A stretch of 36,041 bases of DNA, from assembly GCF_006345805.1 (NCBI RefSeq), contig NW_021828040.1, positions 1-36,041 on the forward strand, given 5' to 3'. Below the pieces are notes generated by a model, which saw only the letters and a program-made list of their open reading frames with translations, ran no database searches and was not told the origin of the DNA. Both the position numbers and the translations under genes were made by a program. Source of the DNA: Octopus sinensis (Eukaryota). Below are positions 6,015 to 35,444 of the stretch, piece by piece (position 1 is the first letter of the stretch; each line of letters starts with the position of its first letter).

Positions 6015-6178
6015 CGTCATCTTCATCATCATCATCAAGAACAACAAGAGCAACAATAGCAAAAAAAAGAAAAAAAAAACAAAATAAAAACCACCAAAAC
6101 AACTTCTGTAGCAATAACAATAAAAATATGCAATATGAGGAACAAGAACTGCAGCAACAATATTATGAACACCACCAT

Positions 6179-6237
<59 letters not shown>

Positions 6238-7243
6238 ACAACAACAACAACATGGAAAACTGAAACAAAAACAAGAAGACAAACATCAAAGACTTTTGCT
6301 AGTTGCAAGAACAACAACAACCACAACAACCGTTTCACCAATGCCACCAGCAAAATTCCACGACAGCAACAGCAACAACAACAAGAAGAGGAATACATAA
6401 GCAACAACAACAAGAACAACAACGAGCGTGGTGTGAAGAGCAACAGCAGAATATGGAGAGAGAGAAAAAAATAGAACAACAAAGAAAACAGGGACCTGAA
6501 CAACAACGTCACCAACAGCGATATCAACAACAACAACAACAACAACAGTGATAGCTGCAAGAACATGTAAACAACCGAAATGATCGGTAAGATCAAAGGC
6601 ACCGTTTTAATGTATCACCACCACCACCATCAAGACCCACCACCACAACCACTACCATCACCATCACCATCACCACCAACAACATCCCCACCACCACCGC
6701 CACCATCACCACCACCAGCACCAAGATCACCACCAAGACCACCACCATCACCACCACCATCACCACCACCACCACCACCACTACCATCACCATCACCACC
6801 ACCACCAACATCACCACCACCACCACCACCACCAAGACCCTCACTGTCACCAGCATCACCACCACTGTTGCACTCACGACTGCTATCGTCTTCATCATCA
6901 CCACCACCATCATCATCATCATCATCAATATCATCATCGTCGTCGTCATCATCATCATCATCGTTTCTCTCTTTTTGTTGTTAATATTGTCCTTGCCAGC
7001 AACAACAACATCAAGGGATAAATAAACAAGAAAACAACAAAATTGGAGAGAAAAAAGGGAAAAGGGAAATGTTAACAACAGCTACAACAACAACGACAAC
7101 GAATATCTTAAGATAACATCATCAACCAGAGAAATAACATGAGTGAAAATATCATCATCATCATCGTCGTCGTCATCATCATCATCGTCGTCGTCGTCGT
7201 CATCATCATCATCATCATCATCATCCTCATCATCATAATCATC

Positions 7244-7274
<31 letters not shown>

Positions 7275-7700
7275 CCACCATGATCATGATCATCATGATC
7301 ATCATCATGATGATCATCATCATCATCGTCGTCATCATCATCATCATCGTCGTCGTCGTCGTCATCATCATCATCGTCGTCGTCGTCGTCATCATCATCA
7401 TCATCATCATCATCCTCATCATCATAATCATCATCATCATCATCACCATCACCATCATCATCACCACCATGATCATGATCATCATGATCATCATCATGAT
7501 CATCATCATCATGATTATCGTCATCATCATCATCGTCATCATGATCAACGTCAACTGCCAAACCCAATTTATCAGCAGCAAGAACAACAAGTACACCACC
7601 ACCATCATCATCATCATCAACAACAACAACAACAACAACAATAATAACAACAACAACAACAGTAGCAACAACAACACTAATAACAAGAAAGGAATTGTTT
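6015..7700. repeat. Long trinucleotide low-complexity block: (CAT)n, (CAA)n, (CCA)n, (CGT)n
   Basis: Poly-H/Q/P/D/I ORFs appear in several frames on both strands, as expected for triplet repeats rather than a real CDS. Confidence 0.9.
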
Positions 7701-11733: not shown

Positions 11734-12643
11734 CAGGGTGTCCATAAAGTCTCTTTACCATTTAAAGAATTATTACAAAGGCAGTTATTAAAATATTTTA
11801 ACCAGATTTGTTTCGTTTTAATAATTGTTTATTAATGTTTTTATTGATATTAAATTTTTGTGCTTCAGATACTCTGTTGATGGGAGGGAACTGGTTCACT
11901 GAACCCCTATAAAATGGTTACTCCTCATGAAAAGGCACAATGTGTATCCTGGTTTATTGAAACAAAATCGGATGTTCAGAAAATCTGAGAATCTGGGGAT
12001 CAGAACACCCCCATGTGACTAGGGAGCTTCAACGAGATAGTCCAAAAGTGGGTGTGTGGTGTGGAATCATGTGCAATCGAATAATTGGTCCATTTTTCTT
12101 CAACGAGACAAGAAATACTGCAGATGTTTACCTCGACCTTCTGACCGAATATGTGGCACCACAACTGATTGATTTACAACCAACCATCATTTTCCAGGAA
12201 GATGGTGCACCACCACATTGGGGACGGCATGTTCGTCAGTTCCTCAATCAAACATTTCCAGACCGATGGATTGGAAGGGATGGGCCAGTTCCATGGCCAT
12301 CGCGTTCGCCAGATGTCACCCCCTTGGATTTCTTTTTATGGGGTTATGTAAAAGATATCGTGCATCAAACAAAGACACGGGACATTGCTGACTTGAAGCA
12401 AAGGATTCGTAATGCCATTGCCACCGATGATGAGGCTATCCTACAGCGAACTTGGCAAGAAATCGAGTACCGTCTTGATGTGCTTCGAGCAACTAATGGT
12501 GCCCATATTGAAGTCTATTAAATAACAATTAAAAAAAACTTTAATAAACAATTATTACAATAAAACAAATCTGGTGAAGATATCTTGTCAACTGCCTTTG
12601 TAATAAAATTTTAAAATTGTAAAGAGACTTTATGGACACTCTG
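11734..12643 (+). mobile_element. Internally deleted Tc1/mariner element, DD41D (rosa/Visitor) type, ~110-bp TIRs, TA target duplication
   Basis: Left end ta|cagggtgtccataaagtctctttacca; right end tgtaaagagactttatggacactctg|ta. Inner TIR parts (ttattacaaaggcagtt / aactgcctttgtaataa) also match. Confidence 0.95.
11914..12521 (+). pseudogene. DD41D transposase remnant: N-terminal 22 aa joined out of frame to the C-terminal catalytic region
   Basis: MVTPHEKAQCVSWFIETKSDVQ (11914-11979), then NLRIWGSEHPH...QEDGAPPH...SPDVTPLDFFLWGYVKD...HIEVY*. I count 41 residues between the D of DGAPPH and the D of PLDF. Confidence 0.9.
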
Positions 12644-13360: not shown

Positions 13361-13453
13361 AAATAAGATTTGATCGGTGCAGCATCGATTTGGACGGAAA
13401 CTACACTGGTTTGGTCTTGTTCTAGAGTCACATTCTGATTGGAATCGTCTCAG
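13361..13453 (-). mobile_element. Inverted upstream segment of the adjacent RTE LINE
   Basis: Minus strand reads LRRFQSECDSRTRPNQCSFRPNRCCTDQILF, matching the non-LTR RT motif R.....R..Q.GFRPGR.C.DQIF. Confidence 0.8.
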
Positions 13454-14497
13454 ATGCTGCATTCGACTCCGTCGATCGTGACACCCTCTGGAAAGTCATG
13501 CAGGCAGATGGTATCCCACCTAAACTTCTCAATCTTATCAAAGCTTATTACCGCTCAACAAGATTCCGCGTACGCGTGTATGGTGAAGGGTCGGAACCCT
13601 TCGAAATACGGTCTGGCGTTCGGCAAGGACGTGTTCTTTCGCCAACTCTTTCCAATTACTCCATCGACTGGATCACCACAAATGCATTAAGGGAGTTCCC
13701 CGGTATCACTGTTGGTCACAACTTTTCCGTCAAGGATCTAGACTACGCAGATGACATTGCGATACTTGATGAAACATTTGCTTACATCCAGTTTGCTATC
13801 AATGAGCTCCAGCGTGTTGCATCACAGATTGGTATGAAAGTCAATGCCTCGAAGACCAAAATCCTCGCAGCCGGCTTTGCCCCACCAGACAAAACACCCA
13901 TTGTCCTCAATGGTGATATTCTTGAAGAGGTTGAGAGTTTCAAATACCTTGGCGCCATCATTACAGCTACAGGTCAAAGTGAGGCTGACATTAAAACACG
14001 AATCGACCTCACTCGCCAAGCCTTCAACCGACTCAGTGCACGACTCTACTCAAGATCTGAGATCCGACGCACCACCAAAGTACAGATCTACCAAGCACTA
14101 GTGCGAACGATTCTCCTTCACGGCAGCGAGTCATGGCCAATGAGGGTGGAAGATATTAAGCGACTAGAATACTTCGATCACCTCTGTCTACGCCGCATCC
14201 TTCGTGTCCGATGGCATCACTTTGTCTCCAACAATTCGATGCGACACCAGTGCAGAATCACCTCCCACCGACAAGTCATCCTAATGAGACATCTACGTTG
14301 GTTGGGTCATGCCCTCCGTCGTCAACCAGGGGAATTCATCTACGAAGCAATTGCCCCAACTTCCCTTCAGGGTTGGCGAAAGCGATGTGGTGGACAACGA
14401 AAAACTTGGCTGATGACAGTCAAGGCTGATCTGGAACCCAACCTAGGTCTCCATATCTACGCCGTTCGCCGCTGGAATAAGGAGTGGTTGGAGATCA
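13454..14497 (+). mobile_element. RTE-clade LINE reverse transcriptase fragment (5'-truncated; 3' end lost)
   Basis: Stop-free frame 13456-14497: AAFDSVDRDTLW, GVRQGRVLSP, DLDYADDI (13741-13758), VESFKYLG, YQALVRTILLHGSESW, LRWLGHALR, GGQRKTW. Visibly more GC-rich than its flanks. Confidence 0.95.
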
Positions 14498-14745
14498 CGC
14501 GGTCGTTGGAAAGTTTCTCATTTGGTTTATTGTAGGACGGAGTCCAGGTGAATAGAAACATCTAAAAAAATCGACTTTGGACAGATTAGGGGTAACAGTG
14601 ATTTTAAGGCCTAATTGACGAAAGTTATGAATGAGATTTTTCCTAAATTTATCCAGAGTATGACCATCACCGCCATAAGATATTTCCAACCCCTCGTCCC
14701 GGTATAAACCAATATCGCAAGATAGGAACTTGATTCTCGAATGTC
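14498..14745 (-). mobile_element. Penelope-like element RT fragment
   Basis: Minus strand reads IGLYRDEGLEISYGGDGHTLDKFRKNLIHNFRQLGLKITVTPNLSKVDF, then after a frameshift LDVSIHL...PYNKPNEKL. Matches the PLE motifs GLYRDDGL, GLKIT...N...V.FLDV and PY.KPN. Confidence 0.85.
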
Positions 14746-15850: not shown

Positions 15851-16302
15851 TTGCCGGACGAAATGCTTAGCGGTGTTTCGCCGACGCTCCGTTCTGAGTA
15901 CAAATTCCGCCGAGGTCGACTTTGCCTTTCGTCCTTTCGGGAACGATAAAATAAGTACCTATTTCTTTATTACCCACAAGGAGCTAAACACAGAAGGGAC
16001 AAACAAGGACAGACATAGATATTAAGTCGATTACATCGACCCCAGTGAGTAACTGGTACTTAATTTATTGACCCTGAAAGGATGAAAGGCAAAGTCGACC
16101 TCGGCGGAATTTGAACTCAGAACGTAACAGCAGACGAAATACCACTTAGCATTTCGCTCGGCGTGCTAACGCTTCTGCCAGCTCGCCTCGATAAAATAAG
16201 TACCAGTTGAACACTGGGGTTGATATAATTGACTCATCCCCTCCCCCAAAACTGCTTTCCTTCTGGCAAAAATTTGAAACTATTATTATTTTTATTATTA
16301 TT
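15851..16302 (+). mobile_element. SINE family B host copy, interrupted by a nested copy
   Basis: 5' part 15851-15957, resumes at 16189 (cgataaaataagtaccagttgaacactgggg...tttgaaactattattatt). Confidence 0.9.
15958..16188 (-). mobile_element. Full-length SINE family B long-tail variant, nested, with 14-bp TSD
   Basis: Reverse complement runs from head ggcgagctggcagaagcgttagcacgcc to tail ...taataaagaaatagg. TSD cgataaaataagta at 15944-15957 and 16189-16202. Confidence 0.92.
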
Positions 16303-16883
16303 GAGTGAGCGAGTAGAGCATGCCATCAAAGTGACACTGGGGTAAAATATACGAAGCCCAATATACCCATCATGACTACCCGTCTGATAAGGGTACACCA
16401 GGCACATGCATCACAACCATATGTGCGCAACATGGTGATCTCATATCAAGATAAACAGCACATGACCTTGCAGGTGGAGCCCAGTTAGAATTTTCTTCAG
16501 ATCGAGTAACCCATCCCGCTCAAAAGGTCCCTGAATAAGGGTTGTTTAAGGACGTTGAACGAAACACCCATGTTTCCAGAGGTGAATTATTCAAACCCCA
16601 AAGAATCCTTCTCAACACATGGCTATGATGCTCCCCCACTACTTCTGCTCGTGATCAGAGATGCACATATCGTCAGCCACTAAGGGACATGCTCAACTGG
16701 TTAAGGTCAAACAACTGACAAGCAAATCTGTGGTATTGAGCAGAATATTTGCTGTAGCCCATCTTTTATACCAAGACAAAACAATGTACATGATAACACT
16801 TCCAATCAGTTAAGATCAGAAGCCATGAGAGCCACTGCCTGGTACTGCATCACGGCATTTATGGTACTGCATCAGGGCATTTA
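16303..16883 (-). mobile_element. ~555-bp (AAT)n-embedded non-coding element, copy 1
   Basis: Reverse complement of 33835-34389 over its full length; flanked by (TTA)n on both sides. Confidence 0.9.
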
Positions 16884-16913
16884 TACTTATTATTATTATT
16901 ATTATTATTATTA

Positions 16914-16949
<36 letters not shown>

Positions 16950-16957
16950 CATATGCC

Positions 16958-17093
16958 TTATTATTAAAGCTGCAAAAATTTAACAAAAAATATCACAGAA
17001 AACTGCTACTCAGAGTTTCCCGTTCCCGTTCGTCGGGCAGTTGTGATCCAAAATGTGATATTTTTTGTCATGTTTTCGCAGCTTTAATAATAA
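16958..17093. repeat. Inverted repeat, 40-bp arms with 4 mismatches and a 56-nt spacer
   Basis: ttattattaaagctgcaaaaatttaacaaaaaatatcaca ... tgtgatattttttgtcatgttttcgcagctttaataataa. Confidence 0.85.
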
Positions 17094-17493
17094 AGCATAT
17101 TACTCTACCTCCGGTATTCGAGTACTGTTTTCCTCACCTTGATTTACATTTCTGTGCTTACTTTGGCACACAAAAGTACGTATAGGAAAAAACCCACATC
17201 TTTAATTGTAGAATTCACCTTACAAAGCCGACAATCGTTTCTACTGTATTAACATGTTTAGCTATAGAAAATATAATTGAAATTAATATTTCCGGAAATT
17301 CATGTTAATACAACTTGTTCAAGGCGATTCAAAATTAGAGAGATTCAAAGTGAACAAAGGAAATATTTGCTCTTCACATTAAAGACGTGAATTTTTCTAA
17401 ATGTATTTTTGATGTCGAATTCACTGAATTTCTGGAAATTCTTCCAAATGGTATTTGGATCTCTGTGTTGTACATGAGGATTTACTTTGGATG

Positions 17494-20199: not shown

Positions 20200-20400
20200 C
20201 CACCACCACCACCACCAAAACCACCACCACCACCACCACCACCACCACCACCACCACCACCACCACCACCACCACTACCACTACCACTACCACGACGACG
20301 ACAACGACGACGACCACCACCACCACCACTACCACGACGACGACGACCACCACCACCACTAACACCACTGCCATCACAATCACCAAAAATAACAACCCGC
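20200..20400. repeat. (CCA)n/(CGA)n/(CTA)n tract
   Basis: Directly visible. Confidence 0.9.
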
Positions 20401-21007
20401 AACAACAAACATAATCTTAGTTATTTGGTGCCGTTTACCATTTTGGAGTTACCAAATGCCTACCTCTACAGCCGTCTTCTTATGCGCACTCATCACCATG
20501 ACATCCTCCACTCACCACATACCTCCTCTCACTTCAGTCACCATCATATCTACATATCACATCTTATTACATATTTTCGTCACCAAATTACTAGCCCCAC
20601 CCCCACTCTTCACCACATTTAACACCTATCGTGGTACAATATATTATGCAATGACCAAAACTCACATCGCGACTCTCTTCACTTCCCCGTTCTTTCTATG
20701 CTCACGGTTACATTACCCGTGCTCAACCTCACACTGTCCCAATTTATTCAGATTCTAGCACAACATCCGAATTCCTAACCTCCATACTCCCCCCCTTCAC
20801 AATAAGCGACCCTCACACAGCACTGTCCTTTTCCTATTAATCCAAACACTAGTGACCCTCAAGATCGTATTATGCTCATTCCCCTTCACACTGTCCCCAC
20901 TTATATTCTCTATCACAACACCTGAACTCTTAATACACTCCACTCCTTTGTTACCTTACATACAACCCATATATCACCATACTTTCCATACTTAACCATT
21001 ATTTTAG

Positions 21008-21250
21008 TCCCACTCACCGTCATATTACCCACACTCACCCTCACATCTACCGCACTCACCCTCAAACTCCCTACATTCACCATCACAGAACACACACTCA
21101 CCGTCATATTACCCACACTCACCATCACACAATCCATACTCACCGTCATATTACCATCATTCATTATCACTAACCCACACTCATCCTCATATTACCCATA
21201 CTCATAATAATCAACCCACACTCACCGTCATATTACCCTCACTCACCACA
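21008..21250. repeat. Degenerate ~21-nt minisatellite (cacactcaccgtcatattacc)
   Basis: actcaccgtcatattacc recurs at about 21013, 21097, 21140 and 21220, with degenerate units in between. Confidence 0.75.
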
Positions 21251-21704
21251 ACACCCGAACCCTCAATCACCATGACTCAATTCCTTTATTACAAACTAGC
21301 CTCACTTCTCGATAAACATCTTTGACTCATCACTCCAGTACTACACTCTATACCACATAAGCTACACTCAAAACCATACAACCCACCCTCATCCCCACCA
21401 CCTATAATTACTACAACACTTACCACTGTACATCATTCGACCTCATCTTGCTACTCACACCGTCCCCCACCTCTATCACCTCACCATGCCCACACTCATC
21501 CCTCAGCCAACACTCACACGACACACATGGCCACTCCCCCCACCCCTAGAACATTCCACACTCGACAACCTTTCCACCGTCCTCCACCCTCCACCCGCCA
21601 CCCTCCACTGACACTTTCAGCAATCCCTTCCGGTTCTTCAAGTTTTACTCCCTTATCTTCTTACGCAACATTCCTCTACCCAATCAACTGCCCCACCCCT
21701 TCTT

Positions 21705-21804
21705 TCAACAACAACAACAACAACAACTACTCCTACTACTCCTACTCCTACTACTACTCCTACTACTACTACTACCACTACTACTACTACTCCTACTACT
21801 ACTA

Positions 21805-21856
<52 letters not shown>

Positions 21857-22260
21857 AAACTTCAATAAAGTTGATAAAATTCTCTCGAGGTTTTCTTTGT
21901 TTTATTCGTTATTCGTGTTCTGCCTTCATCCTCCGCTTGCAACCACCACCAACACCCACACAAGCACCTGCACCACCACCACCACCACCAATAACAACTG
22001 CAGCAACATCACCGCTGCCACCATCCTCTTCATCATCATCATTATTGTCTTCGTTATCATTATTGTCGTTGTTGTCGCCGTGCACGTGCTCATAATCATC
22101 ATCATCTTCATCATCACTATCATGATAATCACCATCACCACTACCACTACCACCACCACCACCACTACCACCAAAACCACAACCACTACCACCAACACAT
22201 CCACTACCATCACCACAAACACTACTACTGCTACAAGCATCACACCACAATCAATACCAC
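21705..22260. repeat. (CAA)n, (CTA)n, (CCA)n and (CAT)n tracts
   Basis: Directly visible. Confidence 0.9.
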
Positions 22261-22581
22261 CACCTCCAATACTACCATCGCCATACCTCCACTTGCACCC
22301 TCGCCCTCACGATCAATATTACAGAAGCACACCTACCTCACGCACCCATACATACACACATACATGCCACATACTGGTCGTATTTTTGTGCCAGTCACAT
22401 GACATAATTTTCTTCTATCAGCAGTTTTTCCAAGAAATAAATTAGTTGACTTAGATTTCCTTTTAGAGGCATAAAACATGATTCATCGAAAGGGGATGAA
22501 GTTTCAGACCCAAGTTAGAGATTCTTTCCTTGGATTCGAACTCTCGACATTTGCTTTACCATTGATATTTCTGTCTTCTGT

Positions 22582-28227: not shown

Positions 28228-29018
28228 TATATAAACTTAGATAAACTTAGATATGTTTCGACCAAAGATTGGTCCAGGCCATGTCTAACTTAATAACACC
28301 ACCTGATAGGATCATTTGAATCCTGTTTAAGTCAGGTTTTGCTTATGGTCCATTGAAGTAGTGAGTTTTTGTTGGGTAAGTTGTATCCAATTATGGGTGG
28401 CTTATCTGGTATTCCTTGAAGGAATCTATCCAGACTCCGTTTAAAGTTGATCGGATCCTTTTCCTCTTTAATCTCTTTCAGGACAATGTTAAATTGGGCA
28501 GGGCCTGTTGAGGAAAAGAAATTATGTTGCAGTGTACATGTATGCTGTGATCTGGAATTGGGCAGGGGACGTATGGCCCGTGGTCCCAGTCTTGGATGAA
28601 CCTTGAAGCTAATGTTCAGGTCGTTTGGGCAAAGTTGGCGGTATATTCTCCACATCGTACAAATGATGTACCGCTCACGGCGAAGCTGGAGAGAGTAGAG
28701 TTTCAAGGCTTTAAGGCGATCCCAATAATCGAGAGCAGCCATACCTTCAATTCGTTTAGTGAGTGCCCTCTGGGGTGATTCAATCCTCGAGATGTTTTGT
28801 CTTGTATGGAGAGACCACTGTGGTCAGCAGTATTCGAGGTGTGGCCGTACAAAGGAGGGGAAAAGTGGTATGATGACACCTTGTTCTCTGGAACGGAAAG
28901 TTCTTAAGATCCAGGAACACATCCTACATATCCTACATCCTTCTTGTTGATGTGTGCATTCCAACTGAGATCGTCATCAACAATTACACCCAGGTCTCTG
29001 ATATTGTTAGTGGCTGTG
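28228..29018 (-). mobile_element. CR1/L2-group LINE 3' fragment (RT C-terminus, 3'UTR and tandem tail)
   Basis: NIRDLGVIVDDDLSWNAHIN..., then after a short duplication/frameshift WILRTFRSRE...FVRPHLEYC*PQWS...IESPQRALTKRIEGMAALDYWDRLKALKLYSLQLRRERY...FKRSLDRFL. Tail is the 10-mer (ataaacttag)x2 at 28231-28250. Confidence 0.9.
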
Positions 29019-33289: not shown

Positions 33290-33318
33290 CAATAATAATG
33301 ATGATGATAATAATAATA

Positions 33319-33370
<52 letters not shown>

Positions 33371-33373
33371 TAA

Positions 33374-33424
<51 letters not shown>

Positions 33425-33445
33425 GATGATGATGATGACGATGAT
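33290..33445. repeat. (AAT)n/(GAT)n tract
   Basis: Directly visible; corresponds to the (ATT)n tail of the minus-strand SINE next to it. Confidence 0.95.
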
Positions 33446-33656
33446 AATCCTTTCTTCTATAGCTACAGGGCCTGAAATTTGAGGGGAGGGGCTATTCGAT
33501 TACATCAATACCAGTGCTCAACTGGAACTTATTTTATCGACCCCAAACAGATGAAAGGCAGAGTCGACTTCGGCGGAATTTGAACTCTGAACATAAAGAC
33601 AGACGAAATGCCGCTAAACATTTCGCTCTATGTGATGACGATTCTGCCAGCGTGCC
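33446..33656 (-). mobile_element. SINE family B full copy
   Basis: gggcctgaaattt...ccagtgctcaactggaacttattttatcgacccc...ggcggaatttgaactc...cgattctgccagc. Confidence 0.9.
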
Positions 33657-33702
33657 TAATAATAATAATAATAATAATAAAATAATAATAATAATAATGA
33701 TA

Positions 33703-34389
33703 AATGCCCTGATGCAGTACCAGGCAGTGGCTCTCATGGCTTCTGATCTTAACTGATTGGAAGTGTTATCATGTACATTGTTTTGTCTTGGTATAAAAGA
33801 TGGGCTACAGCAAATATTCTGCTCAATACCACAATGCCCTGATGCAGTACCAGGCAGTGGCTCTCATGGCTTCTGATCTTAACTGATTGGAAGTGTTATC
33901 ATGTACATTGTTTTGTCTTGGTATAAAAGATGGGCTACAGCAAATATTCTGCTCAATACCACAGATTTGCTTGTCAGTTGTTTGACCTTAACCAGTTGAG
34001 CATGTCCCTTAGTGGCTGACGATATGTGCATCTCTGATCACGAGCAGAAGTAGTGGGGGAGCATCATAGCCATGTGTTGCGAGGGATTCTTTGGGGTTTG
34101 AATAGTTCACCTCTGGAAACATGGGTGGTTCTTTCAACATCCTTAAACAACCCTTATTCAGGGACCGTTTGAGCGGGATGGGCTACTCAACCTGAAGAAA
34201 ATTCTAACTGGGCCCCACCTGCAAGGTCATGTGCTGTTTATCTTGATATGAGATCACCATGTCGCGCACATATGGTTGTGATGCATGTGCCTGGTGTACC
34301 TTTATCAGACAGGTAGTCATGATGGGTATATTGGGCTTCGTATATTTTACCCTATTGTCACTTTGATGGCATGAACTGCTCTCTCACTC
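33703..34389 (+). mobile_element. ~555-bp (AAT)n-embedded element, copy 2 (33835-34389), preceded by an exact 130-bp duplication of its 5' end
   Basis: aatgccctgatgcagtacc...gctcaataccac repeated at 33703-33832 and 33833-33962; ends ...catgaactgctctctcactc|aataat. Confidence 0.92.
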
Positions 34390-34393
34390 AATA

Positions 34394-34460
<67 letters not shown>

Positions 34461-35020
34461 TGCCCTGATGCAGTACCAGGTAGTGGCTCTCATGGCTTCT
34501 GATCTTAACTGATTGGAAGTGTTATCATATACATTGTTTTGTCTTGGTAGAAAAGATAGGCTACAGCAAATATTCTGCTCAATACCACAGATTTGCTTGT
34601 CAGTTGCTTGACCTTAACCAGTTGAGCATGTCCCTTGGTGGCTGACGATATGTGCATCTCTGATCACGAGCAGAAATAGGTGGAGGGAGAATCATAGGCA
34701 TGTTTTGAGAGGAGTTCTTTGGGGTTTGGATAAATCACCTGTGGAAATATGGGTATTTCGTTCAACATCCTTAAACAACCTTTATTCAGGGACCTTTTGA
34801 GCGGTATGGGCAACTCAGCGAGAAGGAAATTCTAACAAAACCCCATCAACAAGTCATGTGCCGTTAGTCTTGTTATGAGAACACCGTATCGCACACAAAT
34901 GGTTGTGATGCATGTGCCTGATGTACCATTATCAGACGGATAGTCATGATGGGTATATTGGGCTTTGTATATTTGTACCACCAGTGTGTCACAGTGATGG
35001 CATGCGCTGCTTTCTCAATC
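34461..35020 (+). mobile_element. ~555-bp (AAT)n-embedded element, copy 3, more diverged
   Basis: tgccctgatgcagtaccaggtagtgg...ggcatgcgctgctttctcaatc|aataatgat; colinear with copy 2. Confidence 0.9.
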
Positions 35021-35044
35021 AATAATGATGATGATGATGATAAT

Positions 35045-35316
35045 AGCCCCAAAATGGCAGAAATTCAAATGACAGTGTTCATGGGAACTGCCCATATCCT
35101 ACGTAAAATACCGTCTATGTAATCTCAAATTTTAAAACAGACTCATAATTTGCTTATGGTTTCTTAAACATTCTCTAGAACAACACTAAGTACAAAACCA
35201 AATATATGACAGTCTAGGCATAACACCAACATGAACTTCTAACTTGTTGTCTCTTGAGGTCTCTGGGTGAGACTTGGAGCCAACTTGTACAAATGCAAAG
35301 CAAAAGTCAAACATAA
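35045..35316 (+). mobile_element. R4/Dong-like non-LTR retrotransposon 3' end with (AAT)n tail
   Basis: SPKMAEIQMTVFMGTAHILRKIPSM* (35045-35122) matches the R4/Dong C-terminus IQK..LLGTA.ILRK.L. The 3'UTR contains tcttgaggtctctgggtgagacttgga; (AAT)n follows at 35317-35365. Confidence 0.75.
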
Positions 35317-35444
35317 AATAATAATTATAAAATAATAATAATAATAATAATAATAATGATGATGATTAACAATTACATAACTAAAGAATAAAAATGTATC
35401 TCAGCATTTGTTCCGTCTCTTTATGTTTGGACTTCAATCTTCTT

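What the first reader, a model, noticed from the sequence alone, without database searches (positions are those of the whole stretch)
33703..35020. Uncharacterised ~555-bp non-coding element found only inside (AAT)n, in fixed orientation
Seen: three full copies (16303-16883 minus; 33835-34389 and 34461-35020 plus), each flanked on both sides by (AAT)n-type repeats. All three have the same polarity relative to the AAT strand. I see no TIRs, no tRNA A/B boxes and no ORF, and the ends are sharp (5' tgccctgatgcagtacc; 3' ctctc(a)ctc|aataat). Copies 1 and 2 look closely similar while copy 3 is clearly older, so activity spanned time. Inference: a non-autonomous, microsatellite-targeting retro-element that is neither a classical SINE nor a MITE. 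Fixed polarity fits strand-specific endonuclease cleavage and TPRT, but three copies give only weak statistics.
Basis: partly seen in the sequence, partly recalled or inferred. Interest (0 to 1): 0.8.

Follow-up and report, generated by a model that had tools for sequence, protein, structure and literature searches.

The report
Octopus Dong-LINE parasite targeting AAT repeats
The repeated ~555-base element is real and mobile: it is a short, non-coding hitch-hiker derived from the tail end of an octopus "Dong/R4" jumping gene that inserts specifically into AAT/TAA microsatellites, so it is a new member of a known kind rather than a new class.

Summary
The window (octopus DNA) holds three full copies, at 16303-16857 (minus), 33835-34389 and 34461-35020 (plus). 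A 129-nt duplicate of the 5' end lies at 33705-33833. All ends are sharp, all copies sit in (AAT)n, and all share one polarity.

I fetched about 187 kb of Octopus vulgaris and O. sinensis DNA and found five more copies plus one fragment:
- All eight independent copies end in "...CTCTCACTC" followed by (AAT)n.
- Six of the eight also abut (AAT)n at the 5' end. AAT tracts make up only 1.4% of the DNA sampled.
- All four truncated copies lack the 5' end and none lacks the 3' end.

The parent was identified. Positions 53-555 continue, at 99% identity and in frame, from the C-terminal endonuclease coding region of a Dong/R4-like LINE (L003:16364-17075). Related LINEs with sense-strand (AAT)n tails sit in the same arrays in the same orientation. 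Dong LINEs are known to target (TAA)n and to be abundant in octopus.

The element is therefore a non-autonomous Dong-derived retroposon, analogous to the R2 "SIDEs". It consists of a 52-nt head of unknown origin plus the LINE's last ~37 codons and 3' UTR. I found no ribozyme or promoter. It is a new member of a known kind, of moderate interest.

The parts
33657..33704 (+). (TAA)16-type tract directly upstream of the 5' partial copy. It is the target microsatellite. Its left edge abuts the 5' head of a minus-strand SINE.
33705..33834 (+). Partial copy of element positions 1-129/130, 100% identical to the start of copy 2 and joined directly to it. Read as a 5'-junction template-jump product.
33835..34389 (+). 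Copy 2, full length (555 nt). It has a 52-nt head (33835-33886), a relic of the LINE ORF C-terminus (about 33887-33999) and a 3' UTR-derived body ending ...CTCTCTCACTC.
34390..34460 (+). (AAT)24. It is the 3' tail/target of copy 2 and the upstream tract of copy 3.
34461..35020 (+). Copy 3, full length and older (88.4% to copy 2).
35021..35045 (+). AATAAT(GAT)5AAT tract: a degenerate tail of copy 3.
35046..35330 (+). A second short Dong-derived element in the same orientation. It holds the last ~22 codons of a Dong-like ORF (...EIQMTVFMGTAHILRKIPSM*) plus a 3' UTR, and is 90% identical to L003:40-313.
35331..35357 (+). (AAT)9 tail of that second element.
16303..16857 (-). Copy 1, full length, 96.2% to copy 2.
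16858..16886 (-). 22-nt tandem duplication of the element's 5' end together with ATAA from the repeat (ATAAATGCCCTGATGCAGTACC twice).
16887..16946 (-). (AAT)20 on the element's strand, upstream of copy 1.
16281..16302 (-). Short AAT tract downstream of copy 1. On the plus strand it is the (TAT/ATT)n tail of the 5'-truncated SINE at 16188-16280, so here a SINE tail served as the target.

Best explanation
The element is a non-autonomous non-LTR retroposon of octopus, derived from and presumably mobilised by a Dong/R4-clade LINE that inserts site-specifically into (TAA)n = (AAT)n microsatellites.

Anatomy, which the sequence shows directly:
- A 52-nt head (ATGCCCTGATGCAGTACC...).
- The last ~37 codons, now decayed, of the LINE's single ORF.
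- The LINE's ~390-nt 3' UTR, ending ...CTCTCACTC.
- (AAT)n after that.

Mechanism, inferred from the R2/R4 paradigm:
1. The LINE protein (Myb-like N-terminus, reverse transcriptase, C-terminal CCHC plus PD-(D/E)XK endonuclease) recognises the (TAA)n duplex and nicks the TTA strand.
2. The protein binds the structured 3' UTR RNA, which the parasite shares.
3. The nick primes reverse transcription of that RNA.
4. Incomplete copying gives 5'-truncated copies.
5. Template jumps at the RNA 5' end give the extra 22-nt and 130-nt 5' pieces.

Because target recognition and priming are strand-specific, every copy has (AAT)n on its sense strand. Each insertion leaves AAT tracts on both sides. New copies and the LINEs themselves therefore pile up head-to-tail in the same tracts.

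How the RNA gets its 5' end (own promoter, or co-transcription followed by cleavage) is not known.
For: 1. Mobility and sharp ends. There are eight independent copies with unrelated flanks on at least three O. vulgaris chromosome records plus the window.

2. Orientation and TPRT. All four truncated genomic copies start at positions 38, 53, 82 and 206 and keep the 3' end. O. bimaculoides ORF relics P0004 and P0006 are truncated at the same end. The plus-strand RNA folds with z = -2.64, against +0.23 for the other strand.

3. Target. AAT tracts are 1.36% of the 223 kb sampled. Even so, 6 of 8 copies abut one at the 5' end and 8 of 8 at the 3' end, always in the same polarity.

4. Parent.
- L003:17075-16364 (minus strand) follows an (AAT)n tract.
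- It reads ...LIDMSIPCDHNIAAKEFDKISKYKDL...VPVIVGSLGMIKK...MIPGLPS, and then runs into element positions 53-555 at 99% identity.
- tblastn of the full-length relative P0087 aligns across the junction, residues 1200-1226.
- The element's frame reads IVLS..TANILLN, matching the family's C-terminal motif IQKIVL..TAHILRK.

5. Same behaviour in the LINEs. Dong-like LINE copies at L003:373-2826, L003:3549-7540, L003:17420-18500 (minus) and L001:40266-42700 all end in sense-strand (AAT)n. They lie in the same arrays and orientation as the element.

6. Clade. P0087 has a Myb-like N-terminus without zinc fingers, an RT domain, CRLC...H....C, and RPDIV/LIDMS/K motifs. Its best solved relatives are R2 proteins, E = 4e-28.

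7. Literature.
- Dong targets (TAA)n in insects, molluscs and cnidarians and has an N-terminal Myb-like domain (PMC7998251).
- The B. mori Dong sense strand is preceded by (TAA)7 (PMC3774820).
- O. vulgaris has 5 recently active Dong-R4 families with 1129 recent insertions (PMC13282606).
- An O. bimaculoides repeat-library consensus contains a Dong with a full-length ORF (PMC9115989).
Against: - Only one locus shows the LINE-to-element continuity. That locus could in principle be a template-switch chimera, although the protein homology across the junction argues against this.
- I recovered no full-length copy of the parent LINE, so the origin of the 52-nt head is unknown.
- No HDV-like ribozyme, the hallmark of R2 SIDEs and of Dong 5' ends, was found by Rfam or by my own descriptor. 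These tests had no positive control: Rfam also found nothing at a Dong-like LINE 5' region.
- Two truncated copies, and one O. bimaculoides full-length relic (P0003), lack a clear upstream AAT tract.
- Assignment of the LINEs to the R4/Dong clade rests on architecture, target and literature, not on a phylogeny.
- The sample is small (8 copies), and its loci were reached through TE-derived gene models.
- Mobilisation in trans is inferred, not shown.
Confidence: 0.85

Rival explanations
1. The true sense strand is the reverse complement. On this view the element is an (ATT)n-tailed retroposon, like the SINEs of this genome, mobilised by an RTE-type LINE, and it anneals by its tail to existing (ATT)n tracts.
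For: - SINEs in the window carry (ATT)n or (CAT)n(ATT)n tails.
- The 22-nt and 130-nt end-anchored duplications could be abortive first-strand initiations.
- Octopus RTE has a microsatellite 3' UTR (PMC9115989).
Against: - All truncations remove what would then be the 3' end.
- The element is co-linear, in sense, with a LINE ORF on the AAT strand.
- Only the AAT-strand RNA is unusually stable.
- It has no similarity to the RTE-like copy in the window.
Confidence: 0.03
2. There is no distinct non-autonomous family. The '555-mers' are simply 5'-truncated copies of the Dong-like LINE that happen to break at a hot spot.
For: - Positions 53-555 are 99% identical to the LINE's 3' end.
- Many copies are truncated at varied points.
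- The second short family (window 35046-35330 and L003:40-313) also starts at nearly one position.
Against: - Four full-length copies share the same 52-nt head. That head does not match the LINE sequence upstream of position 53 in L003.
- An 80%-identical old fragment (L002/L004) spans the head/body junction. The junction is therefore an inherited feature of a family.
Confidence: 0.07
3. It is a DNA-level repeat: either a satellite-like unit (element + AAT) spread by unequal crossing-over, or a MITE or Helitron that prefers AT-rich repeats.
For: - Copies 2 and 3 are head-to-tail with a 626-bp period.
- The element has no coding capacity.
Against: - Copies 2 and 3 are only 88% alike, whereas dispersed copies are 96-99% alike.
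- Copies lie on different chromosome records.
- There are no TIRs.
- The ends are not Helitron-like (no 5' TC, no 3' CTRR) by inspection.
- The one-sided truncation pattern and the LINE homology do not fit.
Confidence: 0.02

Closest known systems
Dong (R4 clade) non-LTR retrotransposons, (TAA)n-specific (Bombyx mori Dong; Dong-R4 families of molluscs and octopus)
   Same: - The target is (TAA)n with the TAA strand as sense on both sides.
- The 3' end is shared with a LINE that encodes RT plus a C-terminal restriction-like endonuclease and a Myb-like N-terminus.
- Copies are 5'-truncated.
- Copies form head-to-tail arrays.
   Different: - The element is 555 nt and encodes nothing.
- Its first 52 nt are not found in the LINE copies I could read.
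- It appears far more numerous than the LINEs in my small sample.
SIDEs (Short Internally Deleted Elements) of R2 in Drosophila (Eickbush & Eickbush 2012; described in PMC3774820)
   Same: It is a non-autonomous parasite of a site-specific, REL-endonuclease LINE. It keeps the LINE's 3' UTR for recognition by the RT, and it shares the LINE's target and orientation.
   Different: - SIDEs are defined by carrying the R2 5' HDV-like ribozyme. I detected none here.
- SIDEs live in 28S rDNA at low copy number. This family lives in dispersed microsatellites, at roughly one copy per 25-35 kb of the DNA sampled.
LINE-dependent SINEs with shared 3' tails (for example the tRNA-derived octopus SINEs in this window, or RTE-derived SINEs)
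   Same: It is a short, non-coding retroposon with a microsatellite tail that depends on a LINE.
   Different: - It has no pol III-type head (no tRNA, 5S or 7SL).
- Its tail is (AAT)n rather than the SINEs' (ATT)n.
- It shows strong target-site specificity.

Membership tests
Dong/R4-dependent non-autonomous retroposon (SIDE-like) | Inserted in (TAA)n with the TAA/AAT strand as sense strand on both sides | tested here: met
   8 of 8 copies have (AAT)n at the 3' end and 6 of 8 at the 5' end, all in one polarity. AAT tracts are 1.36% of the sequence sampled.
Dong/R4-dependent non-autonomous retroposon (SIDE-like) | 3' region shared with the 3' end of an autonomous partner LINE | tested here: met
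   At L003:16364-17075, endonuclease-domain coding sequence runs in frame into positions 53-555 at 99% identity. This rests on one locus only.
Dong/R4-dependent non-autonomous retroposon (SIDE-like) | TPRT signature: constant 3' end and variable 5' truncation | tested here: met
   Truncated copies start at positions 38, 53, 82 and 206, and none is truncated at the 3' end. P0004 and P0006 agree.
Dong/R4-dependent non-autonomous retroposon (SIDE-like) | 5' HDV-like self-cleaving ribozyme (defines SIDEs; present in B. mori Dong) | tested here: inconclusive
   There was no Rfam hit and no match to my own double-pseudoknot descriptor. Rfam also found nothing at a Dong-like LINE 5' region, so the tests lack a positive control.
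Dong/R4-dependent non-autonomous retroposon (SIDE-like) | 5' head derived from the partner's 5' end (internal deletion) | not tested
   I recovered no full-length parent LINE. The head has no other match in the 223 kb sampled.
Dong/R4-dependent non-autonomous retroposon (SIDE-like) | Partner belongs to the R4/Dong clade | tested here: inconclusive
   The architecture fits: Myb-like N-terminus without zinc fingers, RT, CCHC plus PD-(D/E)XK, and R2 proteins as the best PDB hits. The (TAA)n target fits as well. No phylogeny with reference Dong/R4 sequences was made. RepeatMasker-type 'Dong-R4' families are reported for octopus (PMC13282606).
Dong/R4-dependent non-autonomous retroposon (SIDE-like) | Mobilised in trans by the partner's protein | not testable with these tools
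   This needs a retrotransposition assay or polymorphism data.
Classical SINE | Pol III-type head derived from tRNA, 5S or 7SL with A/B boxes | tested here: not met
   ARAGORN found nothing and Rfam found nothing. TTTT runs occur on the sense strand.
MITE / DNA transposon | Terminal inverted repeats and target-site duplication | tested here: not met
   No terminal inverted pair was found. The one-sided truncations do not fit either.
Helitron | 5' TC and 3' CTRR ends with a sub-terminal hairpin, inserted between A and T | tested here: not met
   The ends are ATGCCCTG... and ...CTCACTC. This was judged by inspection only.
Satellite DNA | Homogenised head-to-tail arrays | tested here: not met
   The adjacent copies 2 and 3 are 88% alike, while dispersed copies are 96-99% alike.

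The most novel reading that the evidence does not exclude
The family may be an unusually successful parasite of Dong LINEs, on the order of 10^4-10^5 copies if the sampled density holds. Two further readings are not excluded.

1. Its 52-nt head could supply a 5'-end-forming device that is not an HDV-like ribozyme, such as a new promoter or a new processing signal.

2. The element could drive a self-reinforcing cycle:
- SINE (ATT)n tails provide the first landing pads.
- Every Dong-type insertion creates two new AAT tracts.
- The two strands of one microsatellite are then exploited by two different retroelement systems.
This cycle would help to explain the microsatellite-rich, TE-nested architecture of octopus genomes.
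Probability: 0.25. Interest if true: 0.55.

Novelty: new member of a known kind. Interest (0 to 1): 0.4.

Why it matters
- It explains a conspicuous, abundant repeat of octopus genomes. Repeat annotation probably labels it 'unknown' or 'unclassified SINE'.
- It ties that repeat to the Dong-R4 LINEs, which have been discussed as possibly active in the octopus brain.
- As far as my literature searches went, it is the first parasite of a microsatellite-specific LINE to be described. It could serve as a natural reporter for Dong activity and target choice.
- It also shows how AAT microsatellites, SINE tails and site-specific LINEs feed one another.
- It does not reveal a new transposition mechanism.

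Tried and rejected
1. Reverse-orientation hypothesis (an (ATT)n-tailed, RTE-dependent element). I held this after because the SINE tails are (ATT)n and the end duplications looked like abortive TPRT. Truncation polarity, ORF colinearity and fold asymmetry rejected it.

2. Coding potential. Six-frame translation shows no open frame.

3. Exact look-ups of the 50-aa chance ORF and of O. bimaculoides relatives gave no DNA.

4. An exact-pattern scan of JGI metagenome contigs gave 0 hits.

5. A search of the stored part of the O. vulgaris transcriptome supplement for six 15-16-mers gave 0 hits. Only about 0.4 Mb of that file is held.

6. HDV-like ribozyme. Rfam at permissive thresholds and my own descriptor found nothing.

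7. The closest full-length relative of the parent's C-terminus (P0098, a Logan contig, L005) is from another family. Its contig lacks the element's ends.

8. TIR search, tRNA search and Rfam at gathering thresholds were all negative.

Full report
**Observation**

The window is cephalopod DNA. A chance ORF of the element matches seven 'uncharacterized proteins' of Octopus bimaculoides at up to 96% identity. Window repeats match Octopus vulgaris chromosomes at 91-96%.

BLAST of copy 2 against the window confirms three full copies:
- 33835-34389 (+), the query.
- 16303-16857 (-), 96.2% identity.
- 34461-35020 (+), 88.4% identity.

It also finds a 129-nt piece (33705-33833) that is 100% identical to the first 129 nt of copy 2 and joined directly to it. 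TRF sees the same piece as a 130-nt tandem duplication. Copy 1 carries a 22-nt tandem duplication of the same end.

All copies have the same sharp ends, (T/A)TGCCCTGATGCAGTACC... and ...CTCTCACTC, and all lie between AAT-type tracts in one polarity. Flanks beyond the microsatellites are unrelated, so these are separate insertions.

Negative checks: no tRNA, no Rfam family, no terminal inverted repeat and no open frame.

**A wrong turn**

The tRNA-derived SINEs of the window carry (ATT)n or (CAT)n(ATT)n tails. I therefore first suspected that the real sense strand was the complement, that is, an (ATT)n-tailed, RTE-dependent retroposon. This needed more copies to test.

**Getting more copies**

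Exact look-ups of the small ORFs gave no DNA, and a metagenome scan found nothing.

The RTE-like RT fragment of the window (13498-14532) did lead to annotated octopus gene models. Their loci could be fetched: L001, L002 and L003 from O. vulgaris GCA_951406725.2, and L004 from O. sinensis, about 187 kb in all.

BLAST found these copies:

| Locus | Element positions | Identity |
|---|---|---|
| L001:39676-40230 | 1-555 | 96.4% |
| L001:42710-43222 | 38-549 | 91.8% |
| L003:16364-16866 (-) | 53-555 | 99.0% |
| L003:2889-3362 | 82-555 | 93.5% |
| L003:29636-29982 (-) | 206-552 | 91.9% |

There is also a 35-nt fragment at L003:7582-7616, and an old 110-nt fragment in the orthologous loci L002 and L004.

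**Orientation and target**

Two O. bimaculoides ORF relics (P0004, P0006) are truncated at the same end.

The sense-strand RNA also folds much better than shuffled sequence (-185 kcal/mol, z = -2.64). The complement does not (z = +0.23).

AAT tracts of five or more units cover 1.36% of the 223 kb examined. Six of eight independent copies abut such a tract at the 5' end, and all eight do at the 3' end, always with AAT on the sense strand. Chance cannot give this: for the 5' side alone the probability is of order 1e-10.

Two truncated copies have no upstream tract. One O. bimaculoides full-length relic (P0003) reads out into only a short A/T-rich stretch. 'Only in (AAT)n' is therefore a strong preference, not an absolute rule.

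**The parent**

The upstream flanks of the truncated copies were informative. On the minus strand of L003 the order is:
1. A Dong-like LINE 3' end (...ACTACTG).
2. (AAT)n.
3. A 125-nt, 5'-truncated copy of the same LINE.
4. (AAT)n.
5. About 210 nt encoding LIDMSIPCDHNIAAKEFDKISKYKDLLMVIEKMWHLKATTVPVIVGSLGMIKK...MIPGLPS.
6. Without a break, element positions 53-555 at 99% identity.
7. (AAT)24.

That coding piece is the end of the PD-(D/E)XK endonuclease domain of a LINE family whose full-length relatives end ...VPVIVGALGMIKKGT..KIPG..SL.EIQKIVLTSTAHILRKTLSI*. The element's own frame continues LGSVIMYIVLSWYKRWATANILLNTTDLLVSCLTLTS*, which is a recognisable, decayed version of that C-terminus. 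tblastn of the relative P0087 aligns across the junction.

The element therefore consists of a 52-nt head plus the last ~37 codons and the ~390-nt 3' UTR of a LINE. Upstream of position 53 the LINE and the element are unrelated. The four full-length copies share the head, so this is a distinct non-autonomous family and not just a truncation hot spot.

**What the LINE is**

P0087 (1237 aa, 62% identical to the L003:4022-6370 ORF) has the following features:
- A Myb/SANT-like N-terminal stretch without zinc fingers.
- An RT domain.
- A CCHC motif.
- RPDIV...LIDMS...K motifs.

Its best solved relatives are R2 retrotransposon proteins, from the RT through the C-terminal region (E = 4e-28).

Several such LINE copies lie in the fetched loci: L003:373-2826, L003:3549-7540, L003:17420-18500 (minus) and L001:40266-42700. 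All end in sense-strand (AAT)n. All sit in the same tracts and orientation as the element.

The literature fits:
- Dong (R4 clade) inserts into (TAA)n in most insects, molluscs and cnidarians, and carries a divergent N-terminal Myb domain (PMC7998251).
- The B. mori Dong sense strand is preceded by (TAA)7 and starts with an HDV-like ribozyme (PMC3774820).
- O. vulgaris has five recently active Dong-R4 families with 1129 recent insertions (PMC13282606).

I did not build a phylogeny, so clade membership is supported but not proven.

**Mechanism**

Shown:
- Strand-specific association with (AAT)n.
- A constant 3' end and 5' truncations.
- A shared 3' end with a LINE that encodes RT and a restriction-like endonuclease.
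- Head-to-tail nesting with those LINEs.

Inferred from the R2/R4 paradigm:
- The LINE protein nicks the TTA strand of the repeat.
- It binds the structured 3' UTR RNA that the parasite shares.
- It reverse-transcribes that RNA from the nick.

The extra 5' pieces are the 22 nt at copy 1 and the 130 nt at copy 2. A comparable 135-nt RT-coding fragment sits in front of the full-length LINE at L003:3414-3548. These look like template jumps at the end of first-strand synthesis, a known property of R2-type RTs (established knowledge). Re-initiation of second-strand synthesis would also explain them.

At copy 1 the downstream AAT tract is the complement of a SINE's (ATT)n tail, so SINE tails can serve as landing pads.

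**Open points**

- I found no HDV-like ribozyme at the head. Rfam also missed any such fold at a Dong-like LINE 5' region, so the negative result is weak.
- The head's origin and the way the RNA 5' end is made are unknown.
- The LINE-element continuity rests on one locus.
- Copy number can only be guessed. Five copies and a fragment in about 187 kb is roughly one per 30 kb, which would mean tens of thousands of copies. The loci are few, however, and were chosen through TE-derived gene models.

**Comparison and verdict**

The element works like the SIDEs of R2. These are non-autonomous elements that keep the LINE's 3' UTR and share its target (PMC3774820, citing Eickbush & Eickbush 2012). The difference is that this element is attached to a microsatellite-specific Dong/R4 LINE and is dispersed at high copy number.

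It is not a SINE (no pol III head), not a MITE or Helitron (no TIRs and no matching ends) and not a satellite.

The mechanism and the LINE clade are known, so the finding is a new member of a known kind. My literature searches found no description of a Dong-derived non-autonomous family. Repeat libraries were not searchable here.

Noticed in passing
window 35046-35357: A second short Dong-derived element (~285 nt) holds the last ~22 codons of a Dong-like ORF (...EIQMTVFMGTAHILRKIPSM*) plus a 3' UTR and an (AAT)9 tail. It is 90% identical to L003:40-313, which starts at nearly the same position after an AAT tract. It may be another non-autonomous family, or the result of a truncation hot spot.
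   Followed up: partly
window 33443-33656 (minus strand) with tracts 33291-33445 and 33657-33703: A full-length tRNA-derived SINE with a (CAT)n(ATT)44 tail has its 5' head directly against the (TTA)16 tract. It seems to have inserted into the same microsatellite as the Dong-type elements, but on the opposite strand. Two retroelement systems may therefore use the two strands of one repeat.
   Followed up: partly
window 16951-17100: A ~150-bp MITE-like element with terminal inverted repeats (ATATGCYTTATTATTAAAGCTGC...) lies directly beside the (AAT)20 tract of copy 1.
   Followed up: no
window 13426-14532 (+): A LINE reverse-transcriptase fragment (Pfam RVT_1, E = 6e-14). Its closest proteins are octopus gene models. 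By its C-terminal motifs it looks RTE-like, but the clade was not tested. It is unrelated to the 555-nt element.
   Followed up: partly
window 11961-12518 (+) and 28332-28742 (-): The first is a mariner/Tc1-like transposase remnant (...DGAPPHW...). The second is a CR1-like LINE C-terminal ORF (...LKLYSLQLRRERY...). Neither gave a Pfam hit, and both were classified by eye only.
   Followed up: no
L002:31591-31699 and L004:31750-31858 (orthologous in O. vulgaris and O. sinensis): A 110-nt fragment is 80% identical to element positions 5-114 and spans the head/body junction. It has no AAT flanks and lies between two copies of AAATATTTATT(T)GATAGA. It may be an old relative or a repair-mediated insertion.
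   Followed up: no
L003:3414-3548: A 135-nt piece of RT-coding sequence (equivalent to P0087 residues 799-843) sits between an (AAT)17 tract and the 5' region of an almost full-length Dong-like LINE. It looks like a 5'-junction template-jump product, similar to the extra 5' pieces of the 555-nt element.
   Followed up: partly
L003:3600-3650 and L005:20-60: A motif, GCGCGTCCCTCAGGGA.A..CCAGCCTGAG.TCGAAAA, is conserved at nucleotide level in the 5' regions of two Dong-like LINEs from different sources. It is a candidate structured or ribozyme element. Rfam did not recognise it.
   Followed up: no
window 6176-7676 and 20200-22300: Very long trinucleotide arrays, such as (ATC)132 at 7151-7547, (CAC)72, (CCA)56 and (ACT)43, create long spurious ORFs. 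The window as a whole is extremely rich in microsatellites.
   Followed up: no
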